DNA of 64,000 nucleotides from positions 92,752,001 to 92,816,000 of the forward strand of contig NW_026262712.1 in assembly GCF_021869535.1 (NCBI RefSeq), in the 5' to 3' direction. This stretch comes from Mytilus californianus. Its lineage: Eukaryota. Position numbers and translations under genes: made by a program. Shown piece by piece: positions 7,553 through 39,454 of the stretch. How positions within the stretch are numbered: position 1 is the first letter of the stretch; each line of letters opens with the position of its first letter. The notes below the pieces were generated by a model. It saw only the letters and a list, made by a program, of their open reading frames with translations, had not been told where the DNA came from and made no database searches.

Positions 7553-7826
7553 NNNNNNNNNNNNNNNNNNNNNNNNNNNNNNNNNNNNNNNNNNNNNNNN
7601 NNNNNNNNNNNNNNNNNNNNNNNNNNNNNNNNNNNNNNNNNNNNNNNNNNNNNNNNNNNNNNNNNNNNNNNNNNNNNNNNNNNNNNNNNNNNNNNNNNNN
7701 NNNNNNNNNNNNNNNNNNNNNNNNNNNNNNNNNNNNNNNNNNNNNNNNNNNNNNNNNNNNNNNNNNNNNNNNNNNNNNNNNNNNNNNNNNNNNNNNNNNN
7801 NNNNNNNNNNNNNNNNNNNNNNNNNN
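7553..7826. other. Assembly gap (274 N)
   Basis: Run of n. Confidence 1.
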
Positions 7827-18067: not shown

Positions 18068-18297
18068 TCATGGCATGGATTTGAAATCACTAATGGCATT
18101 CTCACAAGTTTCTAATTTCTTTTCAACTTTAAGTTTAGATTCTGCCAGTTTATTCTTGACCTCTGACATTTCCATAGTCTGGTCAGTTAATTCGTGAATT
18201 TCTGTTTGGAGCTGCTTCACTTTATCTAGGTGGTATTTTAATATAGAATTTCTGCTTGCAACTGTTTCCATGTTGGACTCACATTTCACACAAACTT
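18068..18297 (-). CDS. ANK gene terminal exon (coiled coil)
   Basis: tttctatttgtag|(E)VCVKCES...[50 protein letters not shown]; heptad pattern. Confidence 0.72.
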
Positions 18298-21200
18298 CTA
18301 CAAATAGAAATATCATTTTATATCATTGTTTAAGTGGGATCTCTGTGGGAATAATGATTTTATTTTGTTTTATTTTGGAATTGATAGGGATGCATGGGGT
18401 AAGGGATGCATGGGGTATACACTATTATACACTAATGAGACATCAACCCAACAACAACAAAAAATAAAATGATCCAATAGACACAGAGGTTGAACCCTGA
18501 ACAGTTGGGGCAAGTATAGAAACTACATTCAAGCTTGATACAGCTCTGAATTTGGATTGTGATTAAATATTTGACACAGCATTGGTTTCGACACAGAATG
18601 AATGTGGTCAAAGAACAGAAAAATTTGTATTGGATTTTTACCTATTATGGTTCAATATTTAAAATCTAAATACATGGTTCGATTCAGCATATCCTAGTAT
18701 ACCAAGAATTTAATTTAATCATTTATTAATGGACAATATTAGCTAAGTTTTCAAAGGTGTTCACTTCATCAAAATACATATATGCTATTTTTAGACATTA
18801 TATATATAAATAAATATTGTTTGGGGTATACCATCTTTCCGCAAGTTTATTGTTTTCTGTTTGATATTAAATTAATATTTAAGATCCATTTTGTTACATC
18901 TGGTGATCATTTTATTTGGCAATCGCCAATGGCAGTCAGCAGGGTTTAAGAACATCCGTTGTTTGACCTGCAAGTCAAATGCGTTTTGTTAAAATATACT
19001 TTTTCACTTTTTTGGTCTTTTGGAAAATGTTGTTTGTGCTGTATTTAGACCCCTTTACCAAATTTGTTTTGCATGCACCGAAAGCTTTATTCTTATAGAG
19101 CCTAGGAGGTCGAGTGGTCTAGCGCGTCGGTGCAAGGCGACTTGGTGCCACGATATCTCAGTAGCATGAGTTCGAATCACGGCCAGGGAAGAACAAAAAA
19201 TTTGCTTCCGCAAATTTACAGATCTAAACATTGTTGGGCTGTTGTTTAGACGAATTATATATATATTTATATATATAATGTCTAAAAATAGCAAAAATCA
19301 ACATTCAATCTATCTAGGAGTGGATCAGTTTGAAAAAAAAAAACTGATGCAGTTACTAAATTAAATTATATAACTGCCTAAGAATGTAACTTTAACACAC
19401 GAATGAGTGTTATAAAAATAGTTGTCATATTTTATATATTCACGCAATATTTCGCTAAACAAATTAGCGTCATCAGGCGTGTGTAGCCATCCAGGTAAAA
19501 AATCAGATGCTGTAAAGAAATTTTTGCAGCTTAATGTAGATGTCTTTGAGATTTTTGGGTCTGTGATAAGCAATAACAGGTGATGGAAAAAATTCTTTTA
19601 AGGAAGAGTCATTTTCAATAAGACGCCAGTGCTTGCAGACAGTAGATGAAATATTTGTCAAATCGGGATGGAAGATGACAACAAACGGAATTCTATCTGT
19701 GCAGGTCGTCTTATCTTTGTATTTCATAAGGATCTTTCGATGTTTTTCTTGGGCTTTATCGAAAGCTTCCTTGATATTTTTGTTTTTGTATCCTCTTAAT
19801 TTTAGTTGTTTTCTGAGTTGTCCCAAACGGTCGTTGAGTTTGGATTCCGAGGAGCAAATTCGCTTTAGTCTGATGGCTTGACTGTAAGGAATGCTCTATG
19901 AGCAGTGTTTTGGTTGACAACTTTTTGGAGAGAGAAACTGGTGTTTGTCAGTTTTTTTTGTGTGGAGATCTGTTGTCATGACCCCGTTTTTTACAAATGT
20001 GGTGGTGTCGAGAAACGCAATTTTCTCGCTTGAAAATTCAGATGTAAATTTTATTGAATGATGGAACTTGTTACAATGATCTAAAAAGTCTTGTAGATGT
20101 TCTGCAGTATCGTCCATTTCATGGCAATATCATCAATCAAACTGAGCCAAGACAAGTGTTTGTATGGCACACTCAAAAGAATGCGTTCTTCAAGATCCTC
20201 ATAAAAAAAGTTGGCAAAAGAAGGTGCCATTTTTGTTCCCAAACTAGTACCGTCAATCTGTAAAAAGTGCTTGTGTTGAAAATAAAGTTATTATTTTCAA
20301 GCACTAGTTTAAGTAACAGAACTAGACAGTCAGTTGGGGGATGTTTATCCTTTCGAGTGTTCCATACTTTTTCACACGAGGTTATTCCTTCATTTTTTGG
20401 AATATTAGTGTATAAAGAACACACATCCATCGAAACCAAAATTGTGTTGTTAGGTAAGGGACTTAAGGAATTCATTTCTTCAAATAGTCAGTTGTATCTT
20501 GAATATGAAATGGCAGTTGTCTAACATGTGGTGTAAGATGGTAATCAACAATTTCTGAAATTTTTTCAGTAGGATGACCATTAGCTGATACTATAGGTCT
20601 CCCTGGAATCCCTTCTTTATGGAGTTTTGGAAGTAAATAAAATAGACCAGCTGTGCGAGTTTCATCTGGGCGTAGATAATCGTATGTGTTGTCATCAATT
20701 TGTTTATCTTTCTTCATTTCCGAGAGGACGTCATTTTTTTTTTTTCTGATTAGTTTGATCACATGTTAACTCTTTATAAAATTTAGTATTAGAGAGCTGA
20801 CGATTCCCTTCTTCAATGTAGTCTGCCTTGTTCATCACAACAACGGTACTTCCTTTGTCTGCTTGTTTGATAACAATGTCGTCATGGTCTTTTAAGTTTT
20901 TCATGGCTTGGCTTTCTGACTTCTTTCTATGTTGTGATGTTACACTATTGTTTCAGATAAGGGTGAAGGTTTGGTACCATTAAAACGTTTAAACCCGCTG
21001 CAATTGTTTGCACCTGTCCTAAGTCAGGAATCTGATGTTCAGTAGTTGTCATTTGTTGATGTGGTTCATAAGTGTTTCTCGTTTTTTATATAGATTTATA
21101 GACCGTTGGTTTTCCCGTTTGAATGGTTTTACACTAGTAATTTTTTGGGCCCTTTATAGCTAGCTGTTCGGTGTGAGCCAAGGCTCTGTGTTGAAGACCG

Positions 21201-23251
21201 TACTTTGACCTATAATGGTTTACTTTTTTAAATTTTGACTTGGATGGAGAGTTGTCTCATTGGCACTCATACCACATCTTCTTATATCTATTTGAAATAG
21301 TCCATACTTGTTTACCACTGATTGAAGATCTGACTTCAGCTTTAACTGATGTTATAAATGATTCCAAATTATGGTTTTTGCTTTTAGGTGGATTCCATGT
21401 ACTTTTCTTTTTAAATCTGAGGATGCATATGTCTCCTTCATCACTTTCATATTCAGATTCATTCATTCTGGTTTCTTTTAAATTTTTCTTCTGTTGTCTT
21501 CTGAAATGTTCTTTCAAACGAAGACGCCTGGCAAATTCTTCTACATCTGTCTCTAATTGTAAATTATTGAAGGTAGCTGGTACTGGACAGAAATTAAGGC
21601 CTTTACTCAATATTTTTTCTTCAAAGGCAGTTAGTTCTATTGATGACAGATTTACAACTAAATTATCTTGGACTGAGTGTTTATGTTTCTTAAAACGTTT
21701 TTTTCTCTGTCGTTTAAATTTACTTTCTCTTTAAATTTGATTTTTTTTCAAAAACAGAACTTTGTTAGTTGAAACGATCTTGTATGAATTTCTTATTCTC
21801 TGTGGCTTTGAAATTTTGTTTTTCTATTTTTTGGATGTGGGATAGTCTTCTCTGAATTACTTCCATGTCTTTAGTAGTAACAGGCAGTGGTGATTTTAGA
21901 AACGTTTCATTTACTTCTGAATTAATTTGTTTGTAACTGTAGATAGAAAAAGAGAGTAAAAGTTGAAGAAGTCGGAAAGATCAATTGAATAAAATATCGT
22001 CCGAACGTTTCATAAACCTGTTTACACCCAGTGTTTGAGGTGTCAATTTGATATTTAAACCTTTTGGTATTATGTTGTCATCTATGTACGATTTAAGATT
22101 TGAAACAAATTCACTGTAACATACATATATAAATATATATGTTACAGTGAATTTGTATAAGCAGGGATTATGTAGAATCCCTGATTTTTCAAGAATTTTG
22201 CATAATCACTAAAATCATTAGTGATTATATATAATCCCTAGAAATGATCAGTGATTTTACATAATCACTGAAAATTTTAAGAATTCTTTGACAAATTCCC
22301 TGAAATGATTTCAGGGATTATCAATAATACAAAGATCCTTTGCTTGATAAGAATAAGTCAAATTTGACAAATATATCATATGTATTACCCTTTATGGTTT
22401 AAGTGGACAGTTTTCATTCACTGTCCATTTATCAAATCTTATTATAAAAGTGAACAGTTTTACTGGTGATATTCTATTCAACTGTGTTGAACCACATTTA
22501 GTCATAAACAAAAATGTATTTAAAATTGAAATTATTAATACTAACATGAATGCATAGATCATGTAATTTGTTGTAAAACAAAGGGAATGAAAGGGATTGA
22601 ATCTCTATTTTATGTTTTCTTTGTTCCAAAGAACAAGGAATTCAAACTAAGCAAAGCAATGCAACTAAAGGTACAGAAACACAAACAGAACACATGCTTA
22701 ATGGATTGAACACAATTTTGGATGTGGCCAACATTGGCTGTAATGTTATACCGATTCCGGCGATTTTTTCTGCATGTTGATCATGGAAAAGGAGACCACA
22801 AAAGTATATGGGCTGTTCCATAAAAACATACATGGGAACCAGGGAAGGCACTTCCAAATCTCAACTATGGGTGGGTGTCATCTTTGTTTATGCATAGTGG
22901 AAATATAAACGAAATTCTAATATGCCTCTATAGGTGGTTACCCCATTTTTGAAGTGCCTTCCCTGGGTACCATGTATGTTTTAATGGAACAGCTCTAATG
23001 ACCATTGTTCATAAAAGGACTGAAAATGAAAATGCTTTGCTATGAACCATGAAAATTTTGTCAGATATTACACAAGGAATCAATTAGAAGTGTCTGATTG
23101 ACCATTTTAGCACCTTCAGATGTTTCTGATTAACACAAGAATATTGTGCTTACAAATTTAATATTCATGTTTCTAAAATTATCAGTGATTATACATAATC
23201 CCTGAAAATTGCAGGGATTCTACATAATCCTTAATTATACACATTTTTTGT

Positions 23252-23295
<44 letters not shown>

Positions 23296-26200
23296 TAATT
23301 ACTCTAAATATCACCATAACAATGTTAAATCTGCAAATTTGTGGAAGCAAATTTTTGTTCTTCCCTCGCCGAGATTCGAACTCATGCTATTGAGATATCG
23401 ATACAATATTGTAATTAAATATTTGACATAGCATAGTTTTCTGACACAGAATGAATGTGGTCTAAGAACTTAAAAATTCAAAATGGGACATTCACCTATT
23501 ATGGTCTAATTTCCAAAATCTAAATACATGGTTAGATTCAGCATATCAAAGAACCAATTCAATTTTTGATGAAATCAAACAAAGTTTAATTTTGGACCCT
23601 TTGGACCTTAATGTGGACCAATTTGATAACATGGCCCAAAATCCAAATACATGGTTAGATTCAACATATCAAAAAACCTCATATATTCAACTTTTGTTGA
23701 AATCAAACAAAGTATAATTTTGGACCCCGATTTGGATCAACTTGAAAACTGGGCCCGAAATAAAAAAATATAACTACAAGTTTAGATTCAGCATATAAAA
23801 AAAAACCTTGAATTCCATTTTTGTTAAAATCAAGCTAACTTTGACTTTGGACCTTAATGTGGACCAATTTGAAAACCAAGCCAATTAATCTAAATACACG
23901 GTTAGATTCAGCATATAAAAGACCTTCAAGAATTTATATTTTGGTGAAATTAACATGATTAAACAAAGTTTAATTTTTGACCCTTTGGACCTTAATGTGG
24001 ACAATTTGAAAACTGGGCCCAAAATCATTAATCTAAATACACAGTTAGATTTAGCATATTAAAGAACCCCCAGAATTCAATTTTTGTTGAAACCAAACAA
24101 AGTTTCATTTTGGACCCTTTGGACCTTAATATGGACCAATTTAAAAAAGGGCCCAAAATCAAAAATCTAAATACGCGGTTTTGGTATATCAAAGAACCCC
24201 AATAATTCATTTTTATATGAAATCAAACAAAGTTAAATTTTATACCCTTTGGACCTCAATGTGGACCAATTTAAAACGGGGCCAAAAATTCAAAATCTAA
24301 ATACACGATTAAATTCAGCATATCAAATAACCCTAAGAATTTAAGACTTTGAATTAAACCCCATTGAAATTGGTCAAGAAATAAGCAATTTACACAAAGA
24401 ACTAGGTACGAGAAGGCTACCTTTTTGTTATTTGAATTTGAAAAGCTAAATTTAAAAAAAAAATATCATTCAACATCATTCAGATGTTCACAAGACATCT
24501 GTCAGATATCAATATCTTTACTTTTGAATTGTTTCTTAGGTATTTGTGTAAGGGCTTCAGCCTTTTTACATCTAATGGAAAAATGCAAATACTGCCAAGA
24601 TAGATTCATTTTGAAATCTTGTCATTAGTATTTAGATCAGTCAATGCCTTACTCAAAAAGATGTTTTTCTACAAGATTTCTTATACAAAGATGTGTATCA
24701 AGTACATATGTGTGTAAAGACTTGGTTCATAGCTAATTTTACCAAAAAATTATGAGTAAATTGCACTTTTAGGTCAAATACATCAATTTCAACATGCTTA
24801 TGATGTCATAATGACAACACAACTGACATTTCTGAACTCAAGTTTCCAGATTAATTCATCCTATTCATTTATTTATCAAGAAAATTAACATTATTTTGAA
24901 AGAATTGAAAATGTTTCCTTTTGAAATTTCATGGGACAAATATTGGCACTAGTTATATCTCCTACTTGATTTAGGACATACATGTATGTTAGGTTTACAA
25001 CTATCAAAATACTTGTATTCATTGTACATCCAAGAACAGAAGTTCAGTTAAAGGGGCATTAGCTACGAAGTTGACAAACAAATCAAAATATGACCTACGG
25101 AAATCTTCAGAGATCATCTCAATGGTTAATTACATGGAGATGGCGTCTATTCTAAAATACACACGAAATGTTGATACACACATTGTAAATTGTTTTTTTT
25201 TTTACTTTTTGTAATTTGGATAGATGTTTTAGTATGTTGTAAAAAATCAATGAACATGGATTTGACAATTAAGGCCCCTTTAAGATAAGTTTCCAGTTGA
25301 TATAAATTTTTGCACAGGCATTGTTTACTGAACAAGCTGACAGTTGAACTTCTTCAATATATAAGAACCAGATTTTTTAATTAGAAAAATATGATAAGTT
25401 AATTTATTTGACAAGACATAATAAAGGCAACAAGATCACATAAGAAAATTATTCTACTTTATAAAAAAAAAACAAAGTGCAGAGAACATGGAAAACTAAA
25501 GACATTTGGACTTGAGTGTATGGTCATCGATTCAACCTGGTATGTTGATAAATGTTCTGAAGCTAAGATGTTACCTTTGTACTGTTTTTCAAGATTGTCT
25601 TTCTCGTCCATATATCTATCCCTGTCCTTGTACAGCGTTTCTAGAAAATCATGTTTGGTGTTTTCACTACACATAGACAGATAGGACATTATTCCTTTTC
25701 CGTTCCCATGATCAGAATCTATACTACCTTTAATAATATAAGAGGTAAAAACACATTCAATATAATCATGGTAATCTAACTCAAATATAGAAGTACTTCT
25801 GTGTTTTTAGTATTGAATCATTTAAATATTGAATAATTACATTGTATCTTCATTGAATTATTTAATAATACTTTATGCTAAAATGCCACATTTCAAACTT
25901 GATCTGTGTTTTGTGGTAATAAGCATTGTGTATAAGTTTCATAACGTTTGGTTGAGGCAAACTTAAGTTAGAGAACGGAAACTAAAAATTTTGCAATTTT
26001 TCCATTTATAAAGGGGCATAACTCTAGAACAGTTAAAGTGACGCCACCAAAATTCAAATTTGATCTGTGTCTCTGGAACGGTTAGAGTGACGCCACCAAA
26101 ATTCAAACTTGATCTGTGTTTTGTGGTAATAAGCATTGTGTATAAGTTTCATAACATTTGTTGAGTCAAACTCAAGTTAGAGAACGGAAACCAATTTTGG

Positions 26201-29200
26201 GACGTACGGACGGACAAGGGTAAAACTTAATGCCCCCACCGCTACGGCGGGGGCATAAAAACAAACAGTTATATTAATAGATTATTTTCGTATAACTGAT
26301 TTTTGACTCCAGAGTATATGATTTTTCGACAGGTTACCTTCTCTGATGTAGGACATTCTGGTACTTGGTCTAGTAAGAGCAACTAAAAGAAGTAAATCAA
26401 GCTAACATTTGGTGCAATTTGGGAAAAGATTGACTGCTTTCTGATCATGCTGATGATTTTGTTGTGTATAGAAAACTGTTTTAAACAAAAAAACGCTCAG
26501 GATGAAATTTAAATGCAATGGCACAGGCCATGTGAAAATTGCCAACAAATCTATGGCTTGCATAAATTATTACTTAATTAACATAAATATGATATACTTA
26601 CAGGTAGAAGACTGACTTGATAGACTTTGAAATGGGCTTGTATTTGATAGTGCCCTATAAAAAAAGGTTGTCACTTTTTTTTATATGGAAATGCATATTA
26701 CTTCTCTACCATGCTGTCTGAAAAAAGTGCATGCAAAAAAAAAACAACATGAAATCTGTGTGGCTTATATTTCTACTAGAAGAACATTTCAATTTCTGTG
26801 ATTTCTGTTAACAGCCATACTATTTAAGAGTCTACATCTTCTCAAATAATGTCAGACTGGATCAATAGTATTCTCCGATTAATTTTTATTATTTTCTTTT
26901 CTTTCTAATATCGCTGTTGTCAAAGTCAGCAAATATGACAACACTTTGAAAGCCTTATGACAACTTAGTTGTCCTGAAAAGTAAATTCATATACTAGACT
27001 GATGCTTAACAATGTTATGTCTACCCTTATTAAAAAGATTTGCAATATTGTTTGAACAGCTATTTGTAGCGCAGAATAACATTTTGACTTTATGGAAAAA
27101 TGGCTAAAAAATATTTAAAATATATTTCATCGACTCTTTAATATTGGAATTCCTGTAGGTTTTAACATATTTGTCCCTAAAAAAAACAATTTTAAAGAAA
27201 GTTGACCATACCTTGTTTATCTTTAATTCTTGCAAAAATTTTTTGGATCGGCATATGAACATTTTTTTTAACTTAATCTTTAGTTTTAATACCATAATAG
27301 CACTTTTTACATAATAATTCTAGCTGTATGGTTATGCACTTGACTGAAGATCTATTTTTACTGTGTGGAAGATCTATCATGGCAAAAGATTCTCTGTTGT
27401 TTGTCATCTTTGTGGTTTTGCTCTTTGCAATATCTGTTCATTATTATTTGATTTTTTGGACTACATAAATTCCTCACAAATAATCAGTGCTAGCTCAGAC
27501 TCATTTGGACACTGATGGGCAGTTGTCTCTTTGGCAATCATACAACATTTCTATAAGTCTATGATAACCAGAAATATGCAAAGATGTAAGGTCATTCCTT
27601 TTATTTCATTTTCTCTAGTATAGCTGGTATTTTCCCTAAATATAATGTGTTTACAGATAATCTGTAAATCAGCCATCAAAATGAGCCAGATTAATTAAGC
27701 AACCTGACCTGTTTAAGACTTGTCATACCTGCATATACACCTATCAAAGCACTTCAAGGGTCATTTGAATACAAAACCTTTATAATTTTTCCTTGATAGC
27801 AACATTTCCATTCTTACTCACTTGAGGGGCCTTGGTGGCCGAGTGGTCTAAGTAGTCGAACTACTGTATCACTAGCCTGTCAACACTGGGATTGTGATGG
27901 GATCCTATCTTAATTGACTAGGATTGTCAGTTTTCCTACAGAAGGTCATGGTTTCATTTCGGGCACTCAGGCTTCCTCAACCAATAAAAACTGACCACCA
28001 CGAAATAGCACAATAGTGCTGAAAGTGGCATTAAAAGCCAATCAATCAATCAATCTTACGCACTTGTTTTACTGGGCCTTATATAGCTAACTATACAATA
28101 TGGGTTTTTCTCATTATTGAAGGCATTACAGTGACCTATAATTGCTTATATCCAAATTCATTTGAACTCCTGTGGATAGTTGTCTTATTGGCAATCAAAC
28201 CACATGCTCTTACTTTTATATTGGTTGAATATCCTACCTGCATTATTAGTTGATCATTTAATTTCTTTCATTCCATATATATAAAAAAAAAACATGTACC
28301 TCTGATCAGCCAATGAAACCTCCATCTCCACTGAATCATCATCCTCTATCTGTAAGGTAGACCAAATCAGATATATATCAAACAGATCCTAATATTCAAT
28401 TTGGAAACAAATATACAGTCCTAATTCTTTATAAGAATTCCATATTTAGTGGTTGCTAAAACACATGCAATTCTTAATTTTGAATGTGGTTTATCAAATG
28501 TTCCAAAATTTTTATTTACCTGTTGGAAACTACAGTCATTAGGCCATGAAAAAATTAGTGTTTGTCTCCCAGGTCAATACTTTTTTTCTTTTTCTTTTTT
28601 GCAGGTGAAAGAAAGGTATTGCTTTGGTTTCTTTTGACAATTTTCAATGACGCTTTTTAAAATTGTCTGACAATCTCTTAAAAGCATGTCAACATTGTTC
28701 AATTATCATTCCTTTAGTTTCATATAGCTTATACCAAAATATAGAATGTAAAACAAGAATTTACTGTCAGGTTAACATAAAATAAAAAGTTTTTCCTGCC
28801 TGACGGGTCTTAATAATTTTCACATGTTAGGGGAAACCAACATTCATTTTTCCATGGCCTTAAGAGACATTGATCAAGTAGGTTTTTACAGTTTTTTGTG
28901 AAAGAATTACCTTAAGTAGAAAAGCTAGATTTTGCTGGTCATAAAGTCATATGCTACTGATATAGTTAAACATAAGAATTTTTTATACTTGTTCATCATA
29001 TTCAACAAATTTGTTTGCAATTTTCATTAAGAGAATTTGAAATTTTGATATAAAGAAAAAGGTAGAATGCATTTACTTAATCAGTTAAACTTTCTTGTTT
29101 TTTAAATTAAAATATTACATGAATGTTTATTGTTAATTATGCAATAGATTTAAATAAATTTTGTCACAAGTTGCCACCTTTTTTACAGACCGTATTATTT

Positions 29201-32200
29201 GTAATTTAAGCAATACTTTTACAGCATCCCCTACTAGACATGCTAGAAAACAATTAACAATATATTAACTAGTCACTCATATATTGCAATTGATCATTGC
29301 CTGAGTTTATTAAGGGTTAACAATGGTCGTCAGTAAATGGGGACCTTTATAATATCGACATTTTCTGATGTCTACATGTTGTCCCTATGACAAATATCCC
29401 ATTTCTTCTCCTTCAATAGAAATACCTTTATGTACTTGATTGGATGGTCTTTGTCATTACAGCTTGATGAGACCGAAGTTATGTCTTTCCTTTTGCAACC
29501 ATTTGATGTACTAGATACTACTGTAATTTGGGGAGATGTTTGTGATACTGTCATGTCTGAAACATGCTGTGAATTTGACTCATCTGAATATCTAGTATTT
29601 AAGAATTTGTCCACGATCGTACTCATAGTTGTATTTGGCTTTGGTAAAGTCTTTGAATGAGATTCACTGTTGATGGATTTTTTTACATTTTCTTTAGGAA
29701 TTTTATTGACCGACATGATCTTATCTTCCTGACATTCACTTGATTTCCATGTTTTTACTGTGGATGGTATTGACTGTTTTAGAAGCAAACCTTTAGAGGC
29801 CAAAAAATCGGAAGCTTTTGATGCAGGAATAACACAAAATGTCTGTCTGGACCAAGGAACTCCTTTTCCAAAATCAGATGATTGAATTGAATTTTTACTT
29901 TGTGTAATATTATCATCATTATCAGTACAAGATGACTGGTTATTTTCTGTACTAATTTTTTTAACATGTGACACTATATTTTTGTGCTTTAGTTGATGAA
30001 TTCCTTGATGAATTGTCCCTGATAAAGGAAAACTAGCCACTCTTTTCATTCTTGCATTTTTTCCTCTCAGAACAATAGGAACATTTTTCGGAACATAACC
30101 TGGTGCGACAGATAAACTATCAACAAAACTATCTGACGGACTACCTAAACTGTCAGTAATATGAATTTGATTCCCTTTAATAGCATAATATACTTTCTGC
30201 TTCTTCTTTTGTGCAGGCTCTGGCACTTTTCCAGTGATTTGATTATTGGAATCTAAAGGTAAACACAAATTGTTACCATAGTTACTATCTGATTTCTCCG
30301 ATACATTTATATCCTGTAAAATAAGAGCGTCATTTCCCTTGCTCATGTCTACTGGTGACGGTCCAACCCAATCTTCATACCGTTTAATGTTACAGACATG
30401 AGCTGGTGTTGAATTTTTCATCTGTGTGACAGAATCTGCATTGTTGATAGCATTTGAAGTTGATGTCACTCTTGTCAATTCATTATTCAGGTCTTCTGAT
30501 TTGGGAGAGGATTTTATTCTACAATCAGACCTTTCTTGTTTGTTAGCACTCAACGAAGTTGATGAAATGTTTTCTGATCTAGATGAGATTTTAATTTGAA
30601 AATCTTCCTTTTTTTCATGACTTGCACTGGGAGACAATGAGACTTTCATTTGTTTTGGTTTAATCAAACCTTTTTTGGACTCTGGGGAAGTTTTTGTATA
30701 TACATGTGAAGATGAGCATGGTGAAGATGGTATTTTTAAACATCCTTCATTTGGTTTATGATTAGGAGAGATTTTCATATCATGGTCTGCTGTAGAAGAT
30801 AGAGTTCTGTCATTTCCAGAGGTTGATTTTGTTCTGGTAATTTTTCGTATCAGTTCTGTCTGTTGCTGTGAAAAACGAGTGTTTTGACAAACAGGTTGTT
30901 CTGTTCCTTTCTTTAGGTTGCTGTATTCCATTGACTCTTTACCAATCTTTATCAACATTGTGGAGATTTTTTCATTACCACAGCTGAAGGCAACATCTAA
31001 TGCAGTCATCCCCTGTTAACAAAAAAGTGATTCAAAATATATCTGTATAATGATGTTCAGTAGGATTAAATAAAACAAATAAACTGTTATCACAGAGATA
31101 TGTCTCGCCTTTTTGTAATTTTGATAATGCAAATGTTGAAATTAAAATAGCAATACTTTAACATGTAAGTTATGCAAATATTCAAAGTCTATGAACCATG
31201 ACTGAAGGTACATGGCTAAACAATCTCCATGGAATGAGATGTGCCAATGCTAATACAACTGCATACCAAATACCATTGACTTATTATAAGTCGTTCCCTT
31301 TAAACAAACCTAAACACAAACATTAACTTATAAACTATGTAAAAGTTTCAAAGTCAATGAACCATGATCAGGGGTGGGGCTATATAATCTCCATGGAAAC
31401 GATAGTTGTAAATGCCAATAAATTTGCATACCAAATATCATTGACTTAACATTGGCAGTTCATCTTAAACTGATCTAATCACAAACTAATACATGTAAAC
31501 TAAGCAAAAGTTTCAAAGTAAATAGACCATGACTGAGGGGCAGGGCCAAATATTCTCCATGGAAATGAGATGTGCTAATACTTATACAACTGAACACCAA
31601 TTAACATTGGCCTACCACTAATGGTTCCCCTTGAACTGACCTAATCACAAACTAATACATGTTAACTTAGCAAAATTTTCAAAGTCTATAGACCATGACT
31701 AAGGGGGCGGAGCCAAATAATCTCCATGGAAATGAGATATGCCAATGCTTATACAACTGCATACCAAATATCATTGACCTACCACTAGTGGTTCTCCATA
31801 AATTGACCTAATCACAAACTAATACATGAAAACTATGAAAAGTTTCAAAGTCAATAGACCTTGACTGAGGGGGCAGTGCCAAATAATCTCAATGGTAATG
31901 AGATGTGCCAATACTAATATAACTGCATACCAAATATTATTACCTACCACTAGTGGTTCACCATGAACTAGACCTAATCACAAACTAATACATTGTTGAC
32001 GCCGCCACCGTCGCCTGAAACAGCATACCTATGTCTCGCTTTTTGACTCCGTCAAGGCGAGACAAAAAACTAGTTAATTTCATATAAAAACAAGTGGCTC
32101 CAAGGGGCCAGTATAACTCTCCTGGCTTTTTTGCATTAAACTGACACAATGCAACAATTATATTTTTAGTTGAATGGAAACTTAGTTTCTGTCTATCCAT

Positions 32201-35200
32201 TATATATTTCAAGAAAATAACCAAAAATGACAAAAATGGGATAAAATTGTCTGTTGATTGACTATTTCATTCATATCGACTTATTTGTGGACCTTGTGTT
32301 GCTGATTATTTGTGCAGTTCAAAGTTTGAGACTATCTATTACAGACATCAAGATAAAAGGTAATAAAGAGCTGCACCATGAGCGCATGATACACCTGTCG
32401 CTTTTTCAAAGAATAAAGTTCCATAACTCCTCAATGTCATATCAGAAATTTATAAAAAACTAAAGGGAGGTTATTTTAATAGATATAAACCAGTCACCAA
32501 AGTTTCATGAAAACTGCTCAAAGCACTTTTGAGTTATTGTCCAAAAACTGGAAAATTACCCCTTTTTTATGAATAAAATCCCATAACTGGAAAATGTAAA
32601 ATCTAAAATTTATAACAGTATACCATAATACGTCCTGTAAACGGGCGTATAAAAACAAAAACACTAAATTTGATCAAAGATCATAACCTAATTAAGGATA
32701 ATAACTTCTATAAAGAGTTGACTAAAGAATTCAGTTATAATATCTATAAGTAGATCCCTTTTGGAAACTGCATTCAAATTAAAGTAATTTACATTTTTAA
32801 CCATTATAAATATGAATGTGACAAAAAAGTTACCTCATTATTTTTAAGCCCAAAATCAAAATGTACAGGTTCCAACATGAATTGAATAGTATTGTAGTTC
32901 TTGGAGAATCTGGCCAATATATGTACAGGAGTATCACCATTGTCATTCACTGAGTTCACAATGTAACTCAATTCTAAAATAATAAAGGACAATAATTAAA
33001 AAAAATACTTTTTTTTGTTTTTTAGACTTTTTATTAAATATCTTACAAGAAATGTAGGCATCAGATCGCTAACAATGTTATTTTCCATACAATTTCAATT
33101 TCAAAGTATGTAATTTTCATAGTAAATGCAAATGTAGCAGGGTTCGACATTAACATGATTAACGGCTGTCCAATTGCCCAGGACAAGTGAAAGTTATCAT
33201 TGTGCAAGTAAAAGCTGTAGTGTATTTGTCCTATGGGCAAGTAAAAAACTCAAAATTAACTATGATTATAAAGATGGAAATCACATGATATGTTGTGGCA
33301 TAATATAATTTGTAAAAGGCTAGCTATAAATACAGGTAAGCAGTCAGGGGACTTATTGAAATAAGTGGCTTTTAAATCACTTATTTAAGTAGCAAATTCG
33401 AAGTTTTGTCACAAATTGTGATTTTGTAGTTTTACCAAAATTTTAAACACATAGCTTTAGATAATATCTTTTCATTAGTAAAATTGAAAAAAATGAACTT
33501 TTTGCCTCTTTCAAGCATCAAGGTTTATGCCTTTGATGCAATCATTTAGCTGCAAATTCTATTTTACTTGAAAAAATGCTATAAAAATGGCTTTACATAA
33601 TGAACTGATACTTTCTCAACAGATTTTTCCCAGCAGTGGGAGTATTTTTCCTGTAAAATTCAAGGTTTCATCTTATAGATTATGTAATAAAATTCTACTG
33701 TTCGTGATCAAAATTTCACTGTTCGGGGGTGTTGAAATTAGTGGGGGTTATTAAAATAATGATACTTAAAGAAGTGATTTTTTGGAAGGAAATTGAGGTA
33801 TGATACTTGAACAAGTGATTTTTATGTCATTATCCTAGATTTAGTACAAGGTCATCACCTGACATGACCCGGTCATCCTATCAACACAGATGTTGGTTCT
33901 GATAATTTTAGCAACATAATTAGTTCCTGGATCATAAGTATTCTATATTTAAAGCTACAATAAAATTAAATCACTTAGTTTAGTGATTAATTTGTACTAC
34001 TTAAATAGGTGATTATTAAAGAAAGACAACTCTTACTTCCAACCTTTATGTAAATAATGTTACTTGAATCAGTGATTTAGAAAATCACTCATTTAAGTAA
34101 GTCCCCTGACTGGTAAGGCAAGCTATAAATACAGGTAAGGCAAGAATCACTGGGAAGGTACTAAATCACTTGTGATTTGAAAAACATACATGTTACTTCA
34201 ACAGCCAGAGCTCAGACATAAATTAGTCTAATTTTGCTTTTGATTTGTAGAGGTCTAAATTTGCATGTTTCATCGGTTCTCTCCCTTTATTTAAAAAAAA
34301 ATGTTTTTCCAACAAGTCAATATATGTTAAGCAAAAAATATTTGACCTTTATCAAAATGTTGCGATTAATGATTTCTTCAAGGCGAAAAGTTGCCAAAAT
34401 TGGCTAACTTCAAGACCCATGCACAAATATAAAAAGGTAATGAAATTGAGAAAACATTGTTAGGCAATGCATTGTCTTCTGAACAAAAATGTCCATTCAC
34501 TTTCTGGTACAACCATTTATAACCACTAAAATTGGAAAAAAATGAAGATTTAAAAAAATGTTCAATCAGATCATTACTTGTACATGTAGCTTATTTATAA
34601 ATAGCTCAGGTCCTTGTAAATTCTCTGAAAGATTGTCTTGTCATCATAGGTGATTTACTTTGACCACAAGGTCAAATAATGTGTTTTCATCCTGTTTCAT
34701 GAAGCATAAATAGACTTAAAACATGTTAAACAAGTCTGTCCTTTTCTGACTAGGACAAGTCCCAAATTGTAAACACATTTTTATCAAAATACATAATTTG
34801 ACTTCTTTAACATGGCTAGAGGTATAGGGGGAGGGTTGAGATCTCACAAAACATGTTTAACCCCGCCGCATTTTTGAGCCTGTCCCAAGTCAGGAGCCTC
34901 TGGCCTTTTTTAGTCTTGTATGTTTTTTAATTTTAGTTCATTTATATGTTTTGGAGTTTAGTTTGACGTCCATTTTCATTGAACTAGTTCACATTTTTGT
35001 TTAGGGGCCAGCTGAAGCCCGCCGATTTTCTCACTGTGTTGAAGACCCATTGGTGGCTTCTGGCTGTTTTCTGCTCTTTGGTCGGGTTGTTGTCTCTTTG
35101 ACACATTCCCCATTCCCATTCTCAATTTTATTAAGTAAGAAACAAAAACAGACTTGTTTATGTCGGAGCTCTGACTGTTCCACATATCATGACATCTTTA

Positions 35201-38200
35201 AAGGTGCAATATATGTACTTGGTCTGTATTTAGGATCTAATTGAAATTGTGTATACATTAAAACTTGGCAAACTACATCTGAATTCTGAATATTAAACAA
35301 GAGGCTCACATCATGTCATGAGCCTGAATCACTCACTTGATGAACACTGCTTATGAGGACCTTTAATTGAACATACTAGTTTTTTGTTTTTTTTGTGTTG
35401 CTAATCATTTTTTGCAATTTATACTTTTAACCTACATGTAGCACCTATACTTTTAGAAGAAAAAAAACAACCAAAACTGCAAAAAAAAAATTAAAAATAT
35501 TTAAATTGACATCTCAGGGACAACAACCCTAGAAGAAGTCATCAGATTTTCTGAAACTTTCAGGGTAGATAGATAGATCTTATCATGTTGAACATTTTTT
35601 GCAAATTTCACTTTTAAACTAGCTCTACAGCATGTACAATTTTCAAGATACCAGCCAAAAACTGCTAAAATAGGAAAACACTGATATTTCAGGGGCAAAA
35701 ACTCCCAAATGGATTGACATGTTTTTCTAAAATCAACAGAGTAGATAAATCTTGTTGTGCTGATAATTTTTACATTTTTAACCTAACTCCTATTATAGTC
35801 AGATAACTGCCAAACACTGCAATAATCTGTAAAAATAGATATTTCAGGTGCAATTACTCCAAAACCTGTTATTAAGAGTTTTCTTCGATTTTCACGAACA
35901 TACATCTGTTTGTGCTAATCATTATTTCAATTTACACTTTACCCTAGTTCATATATTTTTAAAGATAATCATAAAAAATCCGTGAAAATTGGTAAATACT
36001 TACATTTCAGGGGCAAAGCATTACAAAGGGTCTTTAGATTTTCTAAAATATCTAGGGTAGATAGAACATACCATGTTAAACAATTTTGTGATTTACACTT
36101 TTAACCTACCGGTAGCTCCTATAGTTTTGGAAACAATATCCAAGAACTGCCAAAAACTTAAAAATTAACATTAGAACGGATGACCAGTGTTACCCTAGTT
36201 TTCTTTAACTGTTAAAGTTTGTGATATATTAGCCAAAAACTGCAGATTAACCCCTATGTTTTTTTGTGTCAAGGTGGCCATGTTGGTTGATCAACCTCGA
36301 CTAAAATCACTAAGTTCATATAAGATATCCTTTTGATAAAGCAGACAAACTTTCTTTTCATTTATTGAGCTGTTTCAGATGATTAAATATTTAAAGAAAA
36401 GTTAACCAACGACAGATTACAAAAGTAAAACAAAAGCATTTTAACAGCCATTTGTACTACTATACACTTGTAGAAATATTTCCCCAATCTTAAACACATA
36501 TACCATTTATTATGCATTATGCAGATCCAGTTAAATTATCTTTAAATGCCTTCAATCTTTTTTAAAATCTGAAATACCAACAAATTTTGTGTACATCCAT
36601 GTCATTTGGTCTCTGATGGAAAGTGATTTCATTGGCAATCATACCACATCAACTTATTTTTATACAATTTTATATACTTCTCCATAAAGAATTTTTCATA
36701 AACTATGTTATTTTTAAGTCACATACTTACTAGGGTAATCTCCTTTATACCGGTATGATTTTTTAAACCTGGTGATTATACTGTAAATCCATGAAATATA
36801 ATAAGCCTGTTTACTTTTGCTAATGTTATCTTGTAAAGGGAGACAACACATATGTAACGGCATATTTCCATCCTTATTTTTGACAGTTAGACTATCTTTC
36901 CAAAAGATAGCAAGGAGTTCATTGATTATATTTCCTATCTCATGAAATGCTATATCTTTGTTTTCCTGTAATAACTCTATCATTTTATGAAGAACTGTAT
37001 GACCATCTCCAGAATATTTTGGTAGACACATTTTGTTTCTAAGCAGCCATTTAACTAATTCAACTTTACCTGCAAAAGAGTTCATAACTACAATAAAGAC
37101 AACTTTCATACCTATGATCAAACTTCTCTTCACAACAATCATTTTAACATTCAAATACAATTGTTCCAAGTTTTTTTTTTTTTTATATACATTTTGGATC
37201 AGGTTCTAGTGATCCTTCTAGGGCACATTGGTTAATCTCCATTCTTTGATAGGATTTATGTTGTCCAATCTTCAGTTTTCCGTGTATTGTTTTATGAACT
37301 GTTGTTTGTTTATTTTTCATTTTTCTTAAGACCATTATTCTGTCTGTTTTTCTTTGACTAATTGTTTTTGGTTGACCTTTAGGTATCTTCTGTTTTTGGT
37401 TGACCTTTAAGTATCTTCTGTTTTTGGTTGACCTTTAGGTATCTTCTGCCTCTTTTTAACAAGGGCCTTTGAGACATTAATTACTAGACAGTATTGATTG
37501 ATTGTAGGTTGCTTAATGTCCAGTGCCAAATCAATTACATTAATTACTAGACAGTACAGTGAGCCTGTATTCCTAAATTATTCAAGGTTTTGAAAACAGA
37601 CAAGCAAAGAATTACTCAGATTCAGTAAATAACTAAGTTAAATCTGTCCACCACAAGCATAGTATGGGATTTGTTCTTAAGATTTTTATTATTTTATTGA
37701 AGAATGTAAACAGATATTAAGTCCACAGTTTTATTTTTCCTTTGCTCAACATTATTGTACGTGTCTGATACCTTCCCAAAAAAAGTTAATTCCAAAAATC
37801 TGATTATTTTCATGGCTATTTTGTTTTTCATCTCCATCATGTGAGGAATGGATTGCATTGAAATATAATATTCGTGAGGCTCTAATTATAAAGAAAATTA
37901 TGTATCGCTTAAAACATGTTTTGGCTTGTGACAGTCTAAGCTTGTTTTTACTTCATAGTGTCTTAGCTCAGACTGATACAGACTCTCTGTTTTTATGCCT
38001 AAAATTGTATTGCATTGTGGACAATGAATCGACAATTTTATTGCATAAATTGTTTACATTTGAGGCTTAAGAAATTGTCAATAAATTCATAACAATTATA
38101 GTACCAAGCGCAGCAGCCCAATGGAGCATGGTAAGTCTATACTCTAGATTAGGATCAGGAATATCTGCACTCACATCCCATCCTCCATTCTGAAAAAAAT

Positions 38201-38561
38201 GACATCTGCCTATAAATAGCTTTTATCGATTCATTATTTTAGCTAATGTGAGATCACCTTGCACAAAGAAAGCTATATTTCTTTCAGTCTGAGTGTTTGT
38301 CTTTTTGTCTTTTTTTTTTTGTTTTTTGCCACGGCATTGTTAGTTTGTTTTTCAACTATGAATTTGAATATCCTTTAGGTATCGTTCTTCTCTCTTTTAC
38401 ATTTTGTTTACTAACCTGTAGAATGACCTACATTGTATCTTAACAATGACTAAATTAAACGTTAATTATACTACATAACTCACCTCCTCACAAGTGTCGA
38501 ATGTTTTAATCAACTTATCGAGTTCAGAAAAATCTGTATCAGTTCTTTTTACATTAACCAT
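18068..38561 (-). CDS. Ankyrin-repeat protein (5 N-terminal ANK repeats, long Ser/Lys-rich region, C-terminal coiled coil), spliced, about 900 aa
   Basis: Exons in transcription order: 38561-38484, 38189-38105, 37069-36731, 32973-32834, 31012-29426, 28349-28300, [26382-26338 tentative], 25727-25575, 18297-18068. Phases are consistent except for one unresolved junction after 28300. ANK motifs: [67 protein letters not shown]. The last two exons join as [43 protein letters not shown]... Confidence 0.8.
18470..18712 (-). mobile_element. Fragment of the 9776 element
   Basis: cagaggttgaaccctgaacagttggggcaagta...attcagcatatc matches 9812-10030. Confidence 0.8.
19100..19275 (+). mobile_element. tRNA-derived SINE (second family)
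   Basis: A box ggtcgagtggtctagcgcg, B box gagttcgaatc, non-tRNA body and (TA)n tail. Confidence 0.75.
19440..21900 (-). mobile_element. Penelope-like retroelement (RT), degenerate, in the last ANK intron
   Basis: Frameshifted ORF pieces: [133 protein letters not shown]. Confidence 0.88.
20975..21292 (+). repeat. Abundant dispersed repeat (gtcaggaatc...ttggcactcataccacatctt) inserted in the Penelope-like element
   Basis: Interrupts the PLE ORF between SGKQVWTIS and [16 protein letters not shown]; related copies at 4930-5140, 34800-35130, 40425-40750, 41400-41720, 47845-48215, 58255-58556 and 59470-59720. Confidence 0.8.
22140..23255. mobile_element. Non-autonomous TIR element with TGTTACA...TGTAACA ends in a (TA)n context
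   Basis: About 100-bp imperfect TIRs (gggattatgtagaatccctg / cagggattctacataatcc), with TA-rich flanks on both sides. Confidence 0.7.
22810..22995. mobile_element. Small MITE nested in the 22140 element
   Basis: gggctgttccataaaaacatacatgggaaccagggaaggcacttc versus gaagtgccttccctgggtaccatgtatgtttaatggaacagctc. Confidence 0.75.
23295..23403 (-). mobile_element. 5'-truncated inverted copy of the 19100 SINE
   Basis: gcaaatttgtggaagcaaatttttgttcttccctcgccgagattcgaactcatgctattgagatatcg is the reverse complement of the 19150-19215 sequence. Confidence 0.8.
23405..24392 (-). mobile_element. Truncated, diverged copy of the 9776 element
   Basis: Same ttagattcagcatatcaaagaacc subunits, ending with ccattgaaattggtcaagaaataagcaatt. 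Confidence 0.8.
25575..25727 (-). CDS. ANK gene penultimate exon
   Basis: aaag|(G)[50 protein letters not shown], then G|gtaaca. Confidence 0.7.
25882..26262 (-). mobile_element. HINE-type element (atgcccc hairpin family)
   Basis: ggacgtacggacggacaagggtaaaacttaatgcccccaccgctacggcgggggcataaaaa; internal duplication. Confidence 0.75.
26338..26382 (-). CDS. ANK gene tentative 45-nt exon
   Basis: ttacttcttttag|...[14 protein letters not shown], then G|gtaacc; a phase 1-1 reading fits the downstream exon but not the upstream one. Confidence 0.35.
27825..28054 (+). mobile_element. tRNA-derived SINE with (AATC)n tail
   Basis: A-box-like ggtggccgagtggtctaag head; core ggttt...gggcactcaggcttcctcaaccaataaaaactgacc; (caat)n tail; 12-bp TSD cttactcacttg / cttacgcacttg. 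Confidence 0.8.
28300..28349 (-). CDS. ANK gene exon (acidic)
   Basis: cttacag|[16 protein letters not shown], then AG|gtacat. Confidence 0.55.
29426..31012 (-). CDS. ANK gene large exon (ANK5 plus Ser/Lys-rich low-complexity region)
   Basis: 545-aa ORF 29372..31009; aacag|GGG ATG ACT (GMTALDVAF); likely donor AAG|gtattt at 29426. Confidence 0.85.
31088..32070 (-). mobile_element. HINE-type element with about 5 internal ~165-bp repeats
   Basis: Repeated ccatggaaatgagatgtgccaatgc...cataccaaatatcattgac units; terminal hairpin tgtctcgc...ggcgagacaaaaaa. Confidence 0.75.
32362..32655 (-). mobile_element. Short HINE-type element
   Basis: Terminal hairpin atacgtcc...gggcgtat followed by an A-run; head aaagagctgcaccatgagcgcatgatacacc. 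Confidence 0.55.
32834..32973 (-). CDS. ANK gene exon (ANK4)
   Basis: (K)[46 protein letters not shown]|gtaact. Confidence 0.88.
33341..34112. mobile_element. MITE with 5-bp TSD
   Basis: TIR cagtcaggggactta / taagtcccctgactg; gtaag on both flanks. Confidence 0.75.
34800..35130 (+). repeat. Dispersed repeat, closely matching the inverted copy at 58255-58556
   Basis: gagatctcacaaaacatgtttaaccccgccgc...cattccccattcccattctcaatttta. Confidence 0.85.
35296..36420 (-). mobile_element. Degenerate HINE-type element (gctcacc family) with repeated core
   Basis: aaacaagaggctc...gagcctgaatcactcacttg head; repeated atttcaggggcaa core; ggtggccatgttggttga. Confidence 0.6.
36731..37069 (-). CDS. ANK gene exon (ANK1-3)
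   Basis: cttttgcag|(G)KVELVKWLL...GHTVLHKM...[13 protein letters not shown]...YP, then A|gtaagt; lies within ORF 36714..37169. Confidence 0.88.
38105..38189 (-). CDS. ANK gene exon (ANK1 start)
   Basis: ttttttcag|[28 protein letters not shown], then G|gtacta. Confidence 0.85.
38484..38561 (-). CDS. ANK gene first coding exon (probable)
   Basis: ag|AA ATG then [26 protein letters not shown]|gtgagt; phase 0 matches the next exon. The start codon could lie in an exon further upstream. Confidence 0.7.
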
Positions 38562-39454
38562 TTCTACTATTATAGGATGATGTTTTGTTTTGCAATCAAC
38601 ATAACAAAATGGGGGACATAGCTTTCCCTCATTATTTGATGCCATCCTAAAATATAAAATAAATTATTCAATTACTAACTACATAAATGACTTACATATA
38701 CAGTATGCACCAAAATCTTTTCCAACTAATAGTCCAAAGAGCATGTATATCATGTATATAGAAATATATTGAAATAGGCCAATAAATCAAAGTATTTTTG
38801 ATGGATTCTGTTTGTTTTTTTTTTGCATTGAAAAGTATTTTCCTTCAGCATGTTCAGAAAACAACAAGCATTCTGAGAATATTGCATGGCAATACATAGT
38901 CCCCTACAGGGGTAAAAGTTCATTTTACTTGAACAAAATGCTAACTTGATCTATAACATGTCATGGTGTAAACAAAAAGTAAATATCATGTCAATATCTT
39001 CAAGCATGACTAAAACCAGTGTGGAAAACTGATTATATGTGTGAAAAAAAACATAAGATATGATTAATAGTTCTCTAAAATTAGATATGATGTAATACAG
39101 TGTATATCTATTTTCAAATTATAATCAAATATAATTAATAGTTCCAAATATTTTTTCTTTCATTTGTCACAAACTAATATAGATTTGTAACTTATCTATA
39201 AAATGTCAACAACTTTTATCTACACAATGTAATGTATTGAAATATATACATTAACAAAAATAGATTATTATTTAATTAAAGGATTTCTCTTCGTAATTTT
39301 TTTTATATCTATAGCATTCAGAAAATTAGTTTATACTAAATAACAAACAAACCTGCCAAAAAATTCTTCAAATAATTTAACAAAGAATGTCTTTTAAAAA
39401 ATGAGTTATCTCCCTTTGTACAGAAATATGGTTTAACATAGTACTCTAACATTA

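What the first reader, a model, noticed from the sequence alone, without database searches (positions are those of the whole stretch)
18068..38561. Animal ankyrin/coiled-coil protein resembling the fungal Swi6/Cdc10/Mbp1 (SBF/MBF) ankyrin fold
Seen in sequence: the spliced N-terminus reads [30 protein letters not shown]...GHTVLHKM...[11 protein letters not shown]...[12 protein letters not shown]...[18 protein letters not shown]...LKNNEGMTALDV. Two canonical ANK repeats flank degenerate ones, with a YY-helix insert, and the protein ends in a leucine-rich coiled coil. From memory, yeast Mbp1/Swi4/Swi6/Cdc10 share this layout (T.LHWA..G, then AxYYL..., then LLNxQDxNGDTALHIA, then I.NxEG.TA, plus a C-terminal zipper in Swi6/Cdc10). 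Established: SBF/MBF is considered a fungal innovation whose KilA-N/APSES DNA-binding domain was proposed to come from viruses, whereas animals use E2F/Rb. No KilA-N domain is visible here. Inference: this may be an uncharacterised, intron-bearing invertebrate family sharing ancestry with the SBF/MBF ankyrin module.
Basis: partly seen in the sequence, partly recalled or inferred. Interest (0 to 1): 0.7.

Follow-up and report, generated by a model that had tools for sequence, protein, structure and literature searches.

The report
Mussel ankyrin/coiled-coil gene, not Swi6 kin
This is a real, spliced mussel gene for an uncharacterised ankyrin-repeat plus coiled-coil protein that is conserved from corals to bivalves, but its likeness to the yeast cell-cycle regulator Swi6 is no stronger than its likeness to ordinary ankyrin proteins.

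Summary
Nine minus-strand exons (38645 to 18068) reproduce exactly the 932-aa NCBI protein LOC127704146 of Mytilus californianus, and transcript contigs carry three of its splice junctions.

The protein has three parts:
- an N-terminal Cys/His motif, a cap and five ankyrin repeats, with repeats 2 and 3 expanded;
- a roughly 530-aa Ser/Lys-rich linker;
- a conserved C-terminal coiled coil of about 95 aa.

Orthologues with the same layout occur in scallops, Pinctada, Solemya, Lingula, Capitella, Priapulus and cnidarians, at 23-32% identity. All are unnamed, except one scallop protein that NCBI calls 'SWI4-like'.

The Swi6/Mbp1 reading is not borne out.
- For the coral orthologue it is only rank 32, about 3 Z units below the top.
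- Sequence, profile, Foldseek, ESM Atlas and language-model searches all return generic ankyrin proteins first.
- No KilA-N/APSES domain exists, and there is no room for one.
- A Rickettsiaceae ankyrin protein carries the same kind of helical insert.

Best reading: a dimerising, possibly nuclear, protein-protein adaptor of an undescribed metazoan family. Interest is modest.

The parts
38484..38645 (-). Coding exon 1 (aa 1-54), start codon at 38645-38643. An AG acceptor just upstream suggests a 5' UTR exon that I did not map.
   Evidence: Exact translation match to P0001. Junction 38189/38484 seen in contig of run X2.
38577..38618 (-). Family signature C-x3-C-x3-C-x3-HH (aa 10-23, CPPFCYVDCKTKHH) directly before the first helix of the ankyrin stack. 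Possibly a zinc-binding cap (inference).
   Evidence: C14 and H22 are at least 90% conserved across 16 sequences from Cnidaria to bivalves. The first helix of the stack starts at residue 24 in the model.
38105..38189 (-). Coding exon 2 (aa 55-82): end of the cap and start of ankyrin repeat 1 (LHWAAALG).
   Evidence: Junction to exon 3 (37066+3 / 38102+3) seen in contig of run X2. D66, W78, A79, L82 and G83 are invariant.
36731..37069 (-). Coding exon 3 (aa 83-195): rest of repeat 1, the expanded repeats 2 and 3, and the long 'YY' helix.
   Evidence: Helices H108-118, H124-142, H153-162 and H167-191 in the model. Junction 32973/36731 seen in contig of run X1.
32834..32973 (-). Coding exon 4 (aa 196-242): ankyrin repeat 4 and start of repeat 5.
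   Evidence: Pfam Ank_2/Ank_4 at aa 192-266.
29426..31012 (-). Coding exon 5 (aa 243-771): end of repeat 5, then the Ser/Lys-rich linker with the basic cluster KKKQK at aa 511.
   Evidence: No Pfam family. Composition 17% Ser and 10% Lys, plus basic clusters.
28300..28349 (-). Coding exon 6 (aa 772-787), linker.
26602..26654 (-). Coding exon 7 (aa 788-805), linker.
25575..25727 (-). Coding exon 8 (aa 806-856): start of the conserved C-terminal domain (YLSM...DRDRY).
18068..18297 (-). Coding exon 9 (aa 857-932 plus stop): coiled coil ending in the conserved L-x2-C-x2-A-I motif.
   Evidence: Only coiled-coil families and structures match.

Best explanation
The locus is an expressed nine-exon Mytilus californianus gene (LOC127704146). 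It belongs to an undescribed metazoan protein family found in cnidarians, lophotrochozoans and a priapulid. Each member has four parts. First comes a short N-terminal Cys3-His2 motif. Second is an ankyrin domain made of a helical cap plus five repeats, in which repeats 1, 4 and 5 are near-canonical and repeats 2 and 3 have lengthened second helices. Third is a poorly conserved Ser/Thr/Lys-rich disordered linker with NLS-like basic clusters. Fourth is a conserved coiled coil of about 95 residues at the very C-terminus. The most likely mechanism, which is inferred and not shown, is a dimeric adaptor. The coiled coil would pair two chains, the ankyrin groove would hold a partner protein, and the basic clusters and serine-rich linker would allow nuclear import and regulation by phosphorylation. 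Its likeness to yeast Swi6/Swi4/Mbp1 is the likeness that any ankyrin stack with expanded repeats shows. It is not evidence of a special common origin with the SBF/MBF module.
For: - Gene and splicing: the exons reproduce P0001 exactly, and three junctions appear in transcript contigs.
- Family: 14 clusters of single-stretch homologues align from their N-terminus over query aa 8-262. They are named as Mizuhopecten, Pecten, Argopecten, Pinctada, Solemya, Lingula, Capitella, Priapulus, Acropora, Actinia and Sanderia.
- Conserved features: the alignment shows the conserved Cys/His motif and invariant D66, W78, A79, L82, G83, H110, L143, H155 and N205.
- C-terminal coiled coil: conserved nearly gaplessly across phyla, with only coiled-coil hits.
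- Linker: basic clusters of the KKKxKV or KRKS type occur in nearly all members.
- No special Swi6 tie: the PDB sequence and profile lists are headed by generic ankyrin proteins. Foldseek's top 50 lacks 1SW6. The coral model puts 1SW6 at rank 32. ESM Atlas and language-model neighbours are generic ankyrin clusters with no KilA-N. The middle regions of the mussel and scallop proteins miss Swi6. A Rickettsiaceae ankyrin protein has the same kind of helical insert, matching profile positions 167-213 and 175-260.
Against: - 1SW6 is nominally the best of 997 chains for the mussel model, with the largest aligned length at low rmsd (203 residues at 2.9 A).
- The profile of the degenerate region aligns to Swi6 in one stretch of 61 positions at 24.7 bits. 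That is more than the best single-domain score, 21.2 bits, among 3,526 domains of 164 strong generic ankyrin proteins.
- NCBI's pipeline named the scallop orthologue 'regulatory protein SWI4-like'.
- I could not obtain fungal Swi4, Mbp1 or Cdc10 sequences, so no reciprocal or profile-profile test was run.
- Dimerisation, nuclear location and zinc binding are all inferred. Nothing here shows them.
- Expression is low: a depth of a few in contigs, and about none in the part of one raw RNA run that was read.
Confidence: 0.75

Rival explanations
1. One reading: the family is a remote but specific relative of the ankyrin module of fungal SBF/MBF (Swi4/Swi6/Mbp1/Cdc10/Res). This would mean the module predates fungi and that the viral KilA-N domain was later fused to it.
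Confidence: 0.12
2. A cytoplasmic scaffold of the KANK or ANKRD27 kind. The ankyrin domain would bind a coiled-coil or small-GTPase partner, and the C-terminal coiled coil would tether the protein to cytoskeletal or trafficking machinery rather than to the nucleus.
Against: The KANK alignments have high rmsd (4.3-5.9 A). The KIF21A similarity is below Pfam's cut-off and at the level of any coiled coil. There is no KN motif, VPS9 domain or other defining domain. NLS-like basic clusters recur in the linker.
Confidence: 0.13

Closest known systems
Yeast Swi6 ankyrin-repeat fragment (PDB 1SW6) and, by extension, Swi4/Mbp1/Cdc10/Res
   Same: Both are ankyrin stacks of about five repeats preceded by helices, with non-canonical lengthened repeats in the middle. 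203 residues superpose at 2.9 A with the mussel model. One 61-position profile alignment runs across repeats 2-3.
   Different: No KilA-N/APSES domain. Only 17-18% identity. The match is statistically tied with generic ankyrin proteins and falls to rank 32 for the coral orthologue. The range is animal, not fungal. The Cys/His cap and the terminal coiled coil are this family's own features.
Generic ankyrin-repeat proteins (gankyrin/PSMD10, ankyrin-R/B, IkB/Bcl-3, DARPins)
   Different: Repeats 2 and 3 carry insertions of about 11 and 17 residues (my count). The N-terminal Cys3-His2 motif, the long disordered linker and the conserved C-terminal coiled coil are not features of those proteins.
GABP-beta (ankyrin repeats plus C-terminal leucine zipper; from my own knowledge, not tested here)
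   Same: Same architectural logic: an N-terminal ankyrin domain that binds a partner, with a C-terminal zipper for dimerisation, in a nuclear cofactor.
   Different: GABP-beta repeats are canonical and it lacks the Cys/His cap. No sequence or structural comparison was made here, so this is an analogy only.
KANK ankyrin domain (PDB 5YBJ, 4HBD, 6TLH)
   Different: High rmsd (4.3-5.9 A). In KANK the ankyrin domain is C-terminal and the coiled coils are N-terminal. There is no KN motif here.

Membership tests
SBF/MBF family (Swi4, Swi6, Mbp1, Cdc10, Res1/2) | N-terminal KilA-N/APSES-type domain | tested here: not met
   No such Pfam family in any exon, in the whole protein or in the orthologue. 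In the model the ankyrin stack starts at residue 24, and the family N-termini align from about residue 8, so there is no room for a 100-aa domain.
SBF/MBF family (Swi4, Swi6, Mbp1, Cdc10, Res1/2) | Ankyrin domain structurally closer to Swi6 than to other ankyrin proteins, consistently across the family | tested here: not met
SBF/MBF family (Swi4, Swi6, Mbp1, Cdc10, Res1/2) | Sequence similarity to Swi6 above that to generic ankyrin proteins | tested here: inconclusive
   Against: Swi6 is outside the top 60, and absent at E <= 10. For: one stretch of 24.7 bits with the middle-region profile, above the generic single-domain maximum of 21.2 bits. No fungal Swi4 or Mbp1 sequence could be fetched, so no reciprocal test was possible.
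SBF/MBF family (Swi4, Swi6, Mbp1, Cdc10, Res1/2) | C-terminal region homologous to the Swi4/Swi6 heterodimerisation region | not testable with these tools
   Only generic coiled-coil matches were found. No fungal C-terminal sequences or structures were available for comparison.
Ankyrin-repeat superfamily | Pfam ankyrin models above gathering score, and a stacked helix-loop-helix repeat fold | tested here: met
Undescribed metazoan family (LOC127704146-like) | N-terminal C-x3-C-x3-C-x3-HH motif, ankyrin domain with LHWA in repeat 1, and terminal coiled coil ending L-x2-C-x2-A-I | tested here: met
   Alignments A1 and A7. The mussel protein has all three features.

The most novel reading that the evidence does not exclude
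The family is the animal counterpart of the ankyrin-plus-dimerisation module of fungal SBF/MBF. On this reading an opisthokont ancestor already had this cofactor, and fungi made Swi4/Mbp1/Swi6 by fusing a viral KilA-N DNA-binding domain to it.
Probability: 0.1. Interest if true: 0.75.

Novelty: new member of a known kind. Interest (0 to 1): 0.27.

Why it matters
If the Swi6 link were real, it would bear on how fungi replaced E2F/Rb-type G1/S control, because it would show that the non-DNA-binding part of SBF/MBF was inherited rather than invented. The evidence here does not support that. What is left is a clean description of an unnamed, anciently conserved animal protein family with a distinctive Cys/His-capped ankyrin domain and terminal coiled coil. 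The family occurs in cnidarians, lophotrochozoans and a priapulid, and no vertebrate or insect appears among the members I identified. That is a useful annotation and a reasonable target for a localisation and interaction study, but it is not a surprise to specialists.

Tried and rejected
- **Word-based protein searches.** Searches with exon 5, with aa 1-275 and with the scallop orthologue found only Mytilus and scallop orthologues plus generic ankyrin proteins, and no fungal Swi4, Swi6 or Mbp1. As a result I had no fungal sequences for reciprocal BLAST, hhalign or a tree, and I did not type them from memory.
- **PDB profile searches.** Searches with the whole domain (A1) and with the cap-to-repeat-3 part (A2) were swamped by multi-repeat ankyrin chains.
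- **Short sub-profile.** A 34-position sub-profile of the repeat-2 helix (A6) returned only designed PPR and helical proteins and not Swi6. I built a sub-profile of the insert (A5) but did not search with it, because A6 showed that such short profiles carry too little information.
- **Other neighbour searches.** ESM Atlas by shape and language-model neighbours gave generic ankyrin clusters.
- **C-terminal domain.** Pfam and PDB searches gave only coiled-coil noise.
- **Other ORFs in the window.** Pfam found nothing in the larger ORFs, including one upstream at 42687-43205 that might have held a missed N-terminal domain.
- **Literature.** No paper describes an animal SWI4-like or SWI6-like protein.
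- **Earlier notes of this scan.** There was nothing for this place.
- **A wasted call.** The DNA pattern was typed from a guess and is of no value.
Full report
**What is there.** The window is AT-rich animal DNA at about 31% GC. Joining them at GT/AG sites gave an N-terminal protein. A word search with the large exon then returned a 932-aa NCBI protein that is 100% identical, 'uncharacterized protein LOC127704146 isoform X1 [Mytilus californianus]' (P0001), and a 74% identical M. galloprovincialis protein. A search over splice sites found nine coding exons whose translation equals P0001 residue for residue:
- 38645-38484
- 38189-38105
- 37069-36731
- 32973-32834
- 31012-29426
- 28349-28300
- 26654-26602
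- 25727-25575
- 18297-18068

Contigs of small, transcriptome-like runs of the same species carry the exon 1/2, 2/3 and 3/4 junctions with CT..AC ends on the plus strand, which is GT..AG on the gene's strand, at depth 2.8-4. The part of one raw RNA run that was read (about 6%) put almost nothing on the exons, so expression is low.

**Anatomy.** Single exons give only sub-threshold ankyrin signals. The assembled protein passes Pfam's thresholds for Ank, Ank_2, Ank_3 and Ank_4, with the best stretches at aa 66-95 and 192-266 and nothing else. An AlphaFold2 model of aa 1-290, built on a 16-sequence family alignment, has pLDDT 83 and pTM 0.81. It shows:
- a helical cap (H24-31, H39-56);
- repeat 1 (H75-81, H85-93);
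- repeat 2 (H108-118, H124-142);
- repeat 3 (H153-162, H167-191, plus H194-202);
- repeat 4 (H211-215, H219-229);
- repeat 5 (H246-252, H256-276).

After the domain comes a linker of about 530 aa (17% Ser, 10% Lys) with the basic cluster KKKQK. The last 118 aa match only coiled-coil families and structures.

**A real family.** Scoring aa 1-275 against 1.84 billion representatives gave 4,471 hits. Most are giant multi-repeat ankyrin proteins whose scores add up over many stretches. Fourteen clusters instead match in one stretch from their own N-terminus over query aa 8-262, at 27-37% identity. By their source names they are Mizuhopecten, Pecten, Argopecten, Pinctada, Solemya, Lingula, Capitella, Priapulus, Acropora, Actinia and Sanderia, plus unnamed assemblies.

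The alignment shows a signature C-x3-C-x3-C-x3-HH just before the first helix. It also shows invariant D66, W78, A79, L82, G83, H110, L143, H155 and N205, and the consensus DIPDPxxEYRxPLxHWAAxLGK.

The C-terminal domain aligns nearly without gaps from jellyfish to mussel. It starts near Y-L...DRD-x-Y and ends in L-x2-C-x2-A-I. Nearly all members have KKKxKV or KRKS-type basic clusters in the linker.

All members are 'uncharacterized' or 'hypothetical', except that NCBI calls the scallop protein 'regulatory protein SWI4-like' and UniRef calls it 'Ankyrin repeat domain-containing protein 6'.

**Testing the Swi6/Mbp1 idea by sequence.**
- Against all PDB sequences, aa 1-275 hits ankyrin-R/B, DARPins, latrotoxins, NOMPC and gankyrin. 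Swi6 is not in the top 60.
- The same holds for the family profile of the whole domain and of the cap-to-repeat-3 part.
- With a profile of only the degenerate middle (repeats 2-3 and the start of the insert), 1SW6 appears at about rank 50 with E 1.8e-4 and 24.7 bits. Unlike the generic hits, which match only the KDxxGNTPLH core, it aligns in one stretch over profile positions 13-73.
- In a background of 164 strong generic ankyrin proteins (3,526 domain alignments), the best single-domain score for the same profile is 21.2 bits. The Swi6 stretch is therefore a little unusual, but only by about 3.5 bits.
- Much of that stretch (positions 25-57) has canonical ankyrin spacing, by my reading.
- A 34-position sub-profile of the repeat-2 helix does not find Swi6.
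- The middle region of the mussel protein itself (aa 112-200, including [11 protein letters not shown]) finds ILK, ANKRD27 and gankyrin, but not Swi6 at E <= 10. The scallop 'SWI4-like' protein behaves the same way.
- Word searches never brought up a fungal Swi4, Swi6 or Mbp1.
This can be seen in the alignments to ankyrin-1/2.

**Testing by structure.**
- Foldseek against the PDB lists only DARPins, ankyrin-B, espin and the like in its top 50.
- In the search of 48,161 representative chains that does not rely on Foldseek, 1SW6_B is third (15.4), behind the DARPin fusion (15.9) and level with a thermophilic ankyrin protein.
- The mussel's advantage comes from its longer repeat-3 helix (H167-191, against H184-200 in the coral). 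In the alignment this is a Mytilus-specific lengthening, so it is better read as lineage-specific elaboration than as an ancestral Swi6-like trait.
- ESM Atlas by shape gives ANKRD6, PGG-domain, ANKRD27 and espin clusters. Language-model neighbours are generic ankyrin clusters, none with KilA-N.
- A Rickettsiaceae ankyrin protein (P0129) has repeats with the same kind of helical insert. They match profile positions 167-213 at 18.6 bits and 175-260 at 32.9 bits. Such inserts are therefore not peculiar to Swi6.

**Membership.** The defining KilA-N/APSES domain is absent and there is no room for one. An upstream ORF at 42687-43205 has no Pfam family. The structural and sequence criteria are either not met or inconclusive. 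The C-terminal criterion could not be tested. The protein should not be filed with SBF/MBF. It is a member of the ankyrin superfamily and of an undescribed metazoan family.

**How it probably works.** What is shown is the fold, the conservation and the coiled-coil character of the C-terminus. The rest is inferred:
- The terminal coiled coil pairs chains.
- The ankyrin groove binds a partner.
- The basic clusters act as nuclear import signals, and the serine-rich linker is a target for kinases.
- The Cys3-His2 motif may bind zinc and cap the stack.

Taken together, these inferences make the protein a dimeric adaptor, possibly a nuclear cofactor in the manner of GABP-beta. That comparison is an analogy from my own knowledge and was not tested here.

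**Limits.**
- I could not fetch fungal sequences, so reciprocal searches, profile-profile comparison and a tree of the ankyrin block were not done.
- The origin of the 'SWI4-like' name is not visible to me. From general knowledge, such names are usually transferred from the best Swiss-Prot match, so it remains a lead.
- The run of N at 7553-7826 was left alone.

Noticed in passing
window 19506-21730, minus strand (inside intron 8): A string of stop-free stretches in all three minus-strand frames carries reverse-transcriptase-like motifs ([37 protein letters not shown]). It looks like a decayed, frameshifted retroelement in the same orientation as the gene. Pfam gave no significant hit on the fragments.
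   Followed up: partly
window 34813-35132 (intron 3): A stretch of about 320 bases reaches word depths of tens of thousands in the transcriptome-like contigs and about 100-fold in raw RNA reads, with many loose ends at both borders. It is an abundant dispersed repeat, not part of the gene. There is no Rfam match and no notable internal repeats.
   Followed up: partly
window 33400-34110 (intron 3): About 700 bases are covered at depth 30-200 in the RNA-like contigs and about 5-10 in raw RNA reads on both strands, with many fixed differences from the window. This is probably another repeat or a transcribed element within the intron.
   Followed up: no
window 38646-38649: An AG acceptor sits directly before the start codon, and a transcript contig carries 12 further letters at one end of exon 1. 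A 5' UTR exon probably lies upstream, but I did not locate it.
   Followed up: no
P0015 (Mizuhopecten yessoensis XP_021360894.1): NCBI names this orthologue 'regulatory protein SWI4-like', while every other member is 'uncharacterized'. The name may mislead automated annotation transfer to other molluscs.
   Followed up: partly
P0002 (Mytilus galloprovincialis), aa about 211-213: Compared with the M. californianus protein, this model lacks the segment that corresponds to most of exon 4, jumping from GDTP straight to GMTALD. This is likely a skipped or missed exon in that annotation.
   Followed up: no
window 7553-7826: A run of 274 N (assembly gap or masked).
   Followed up: no
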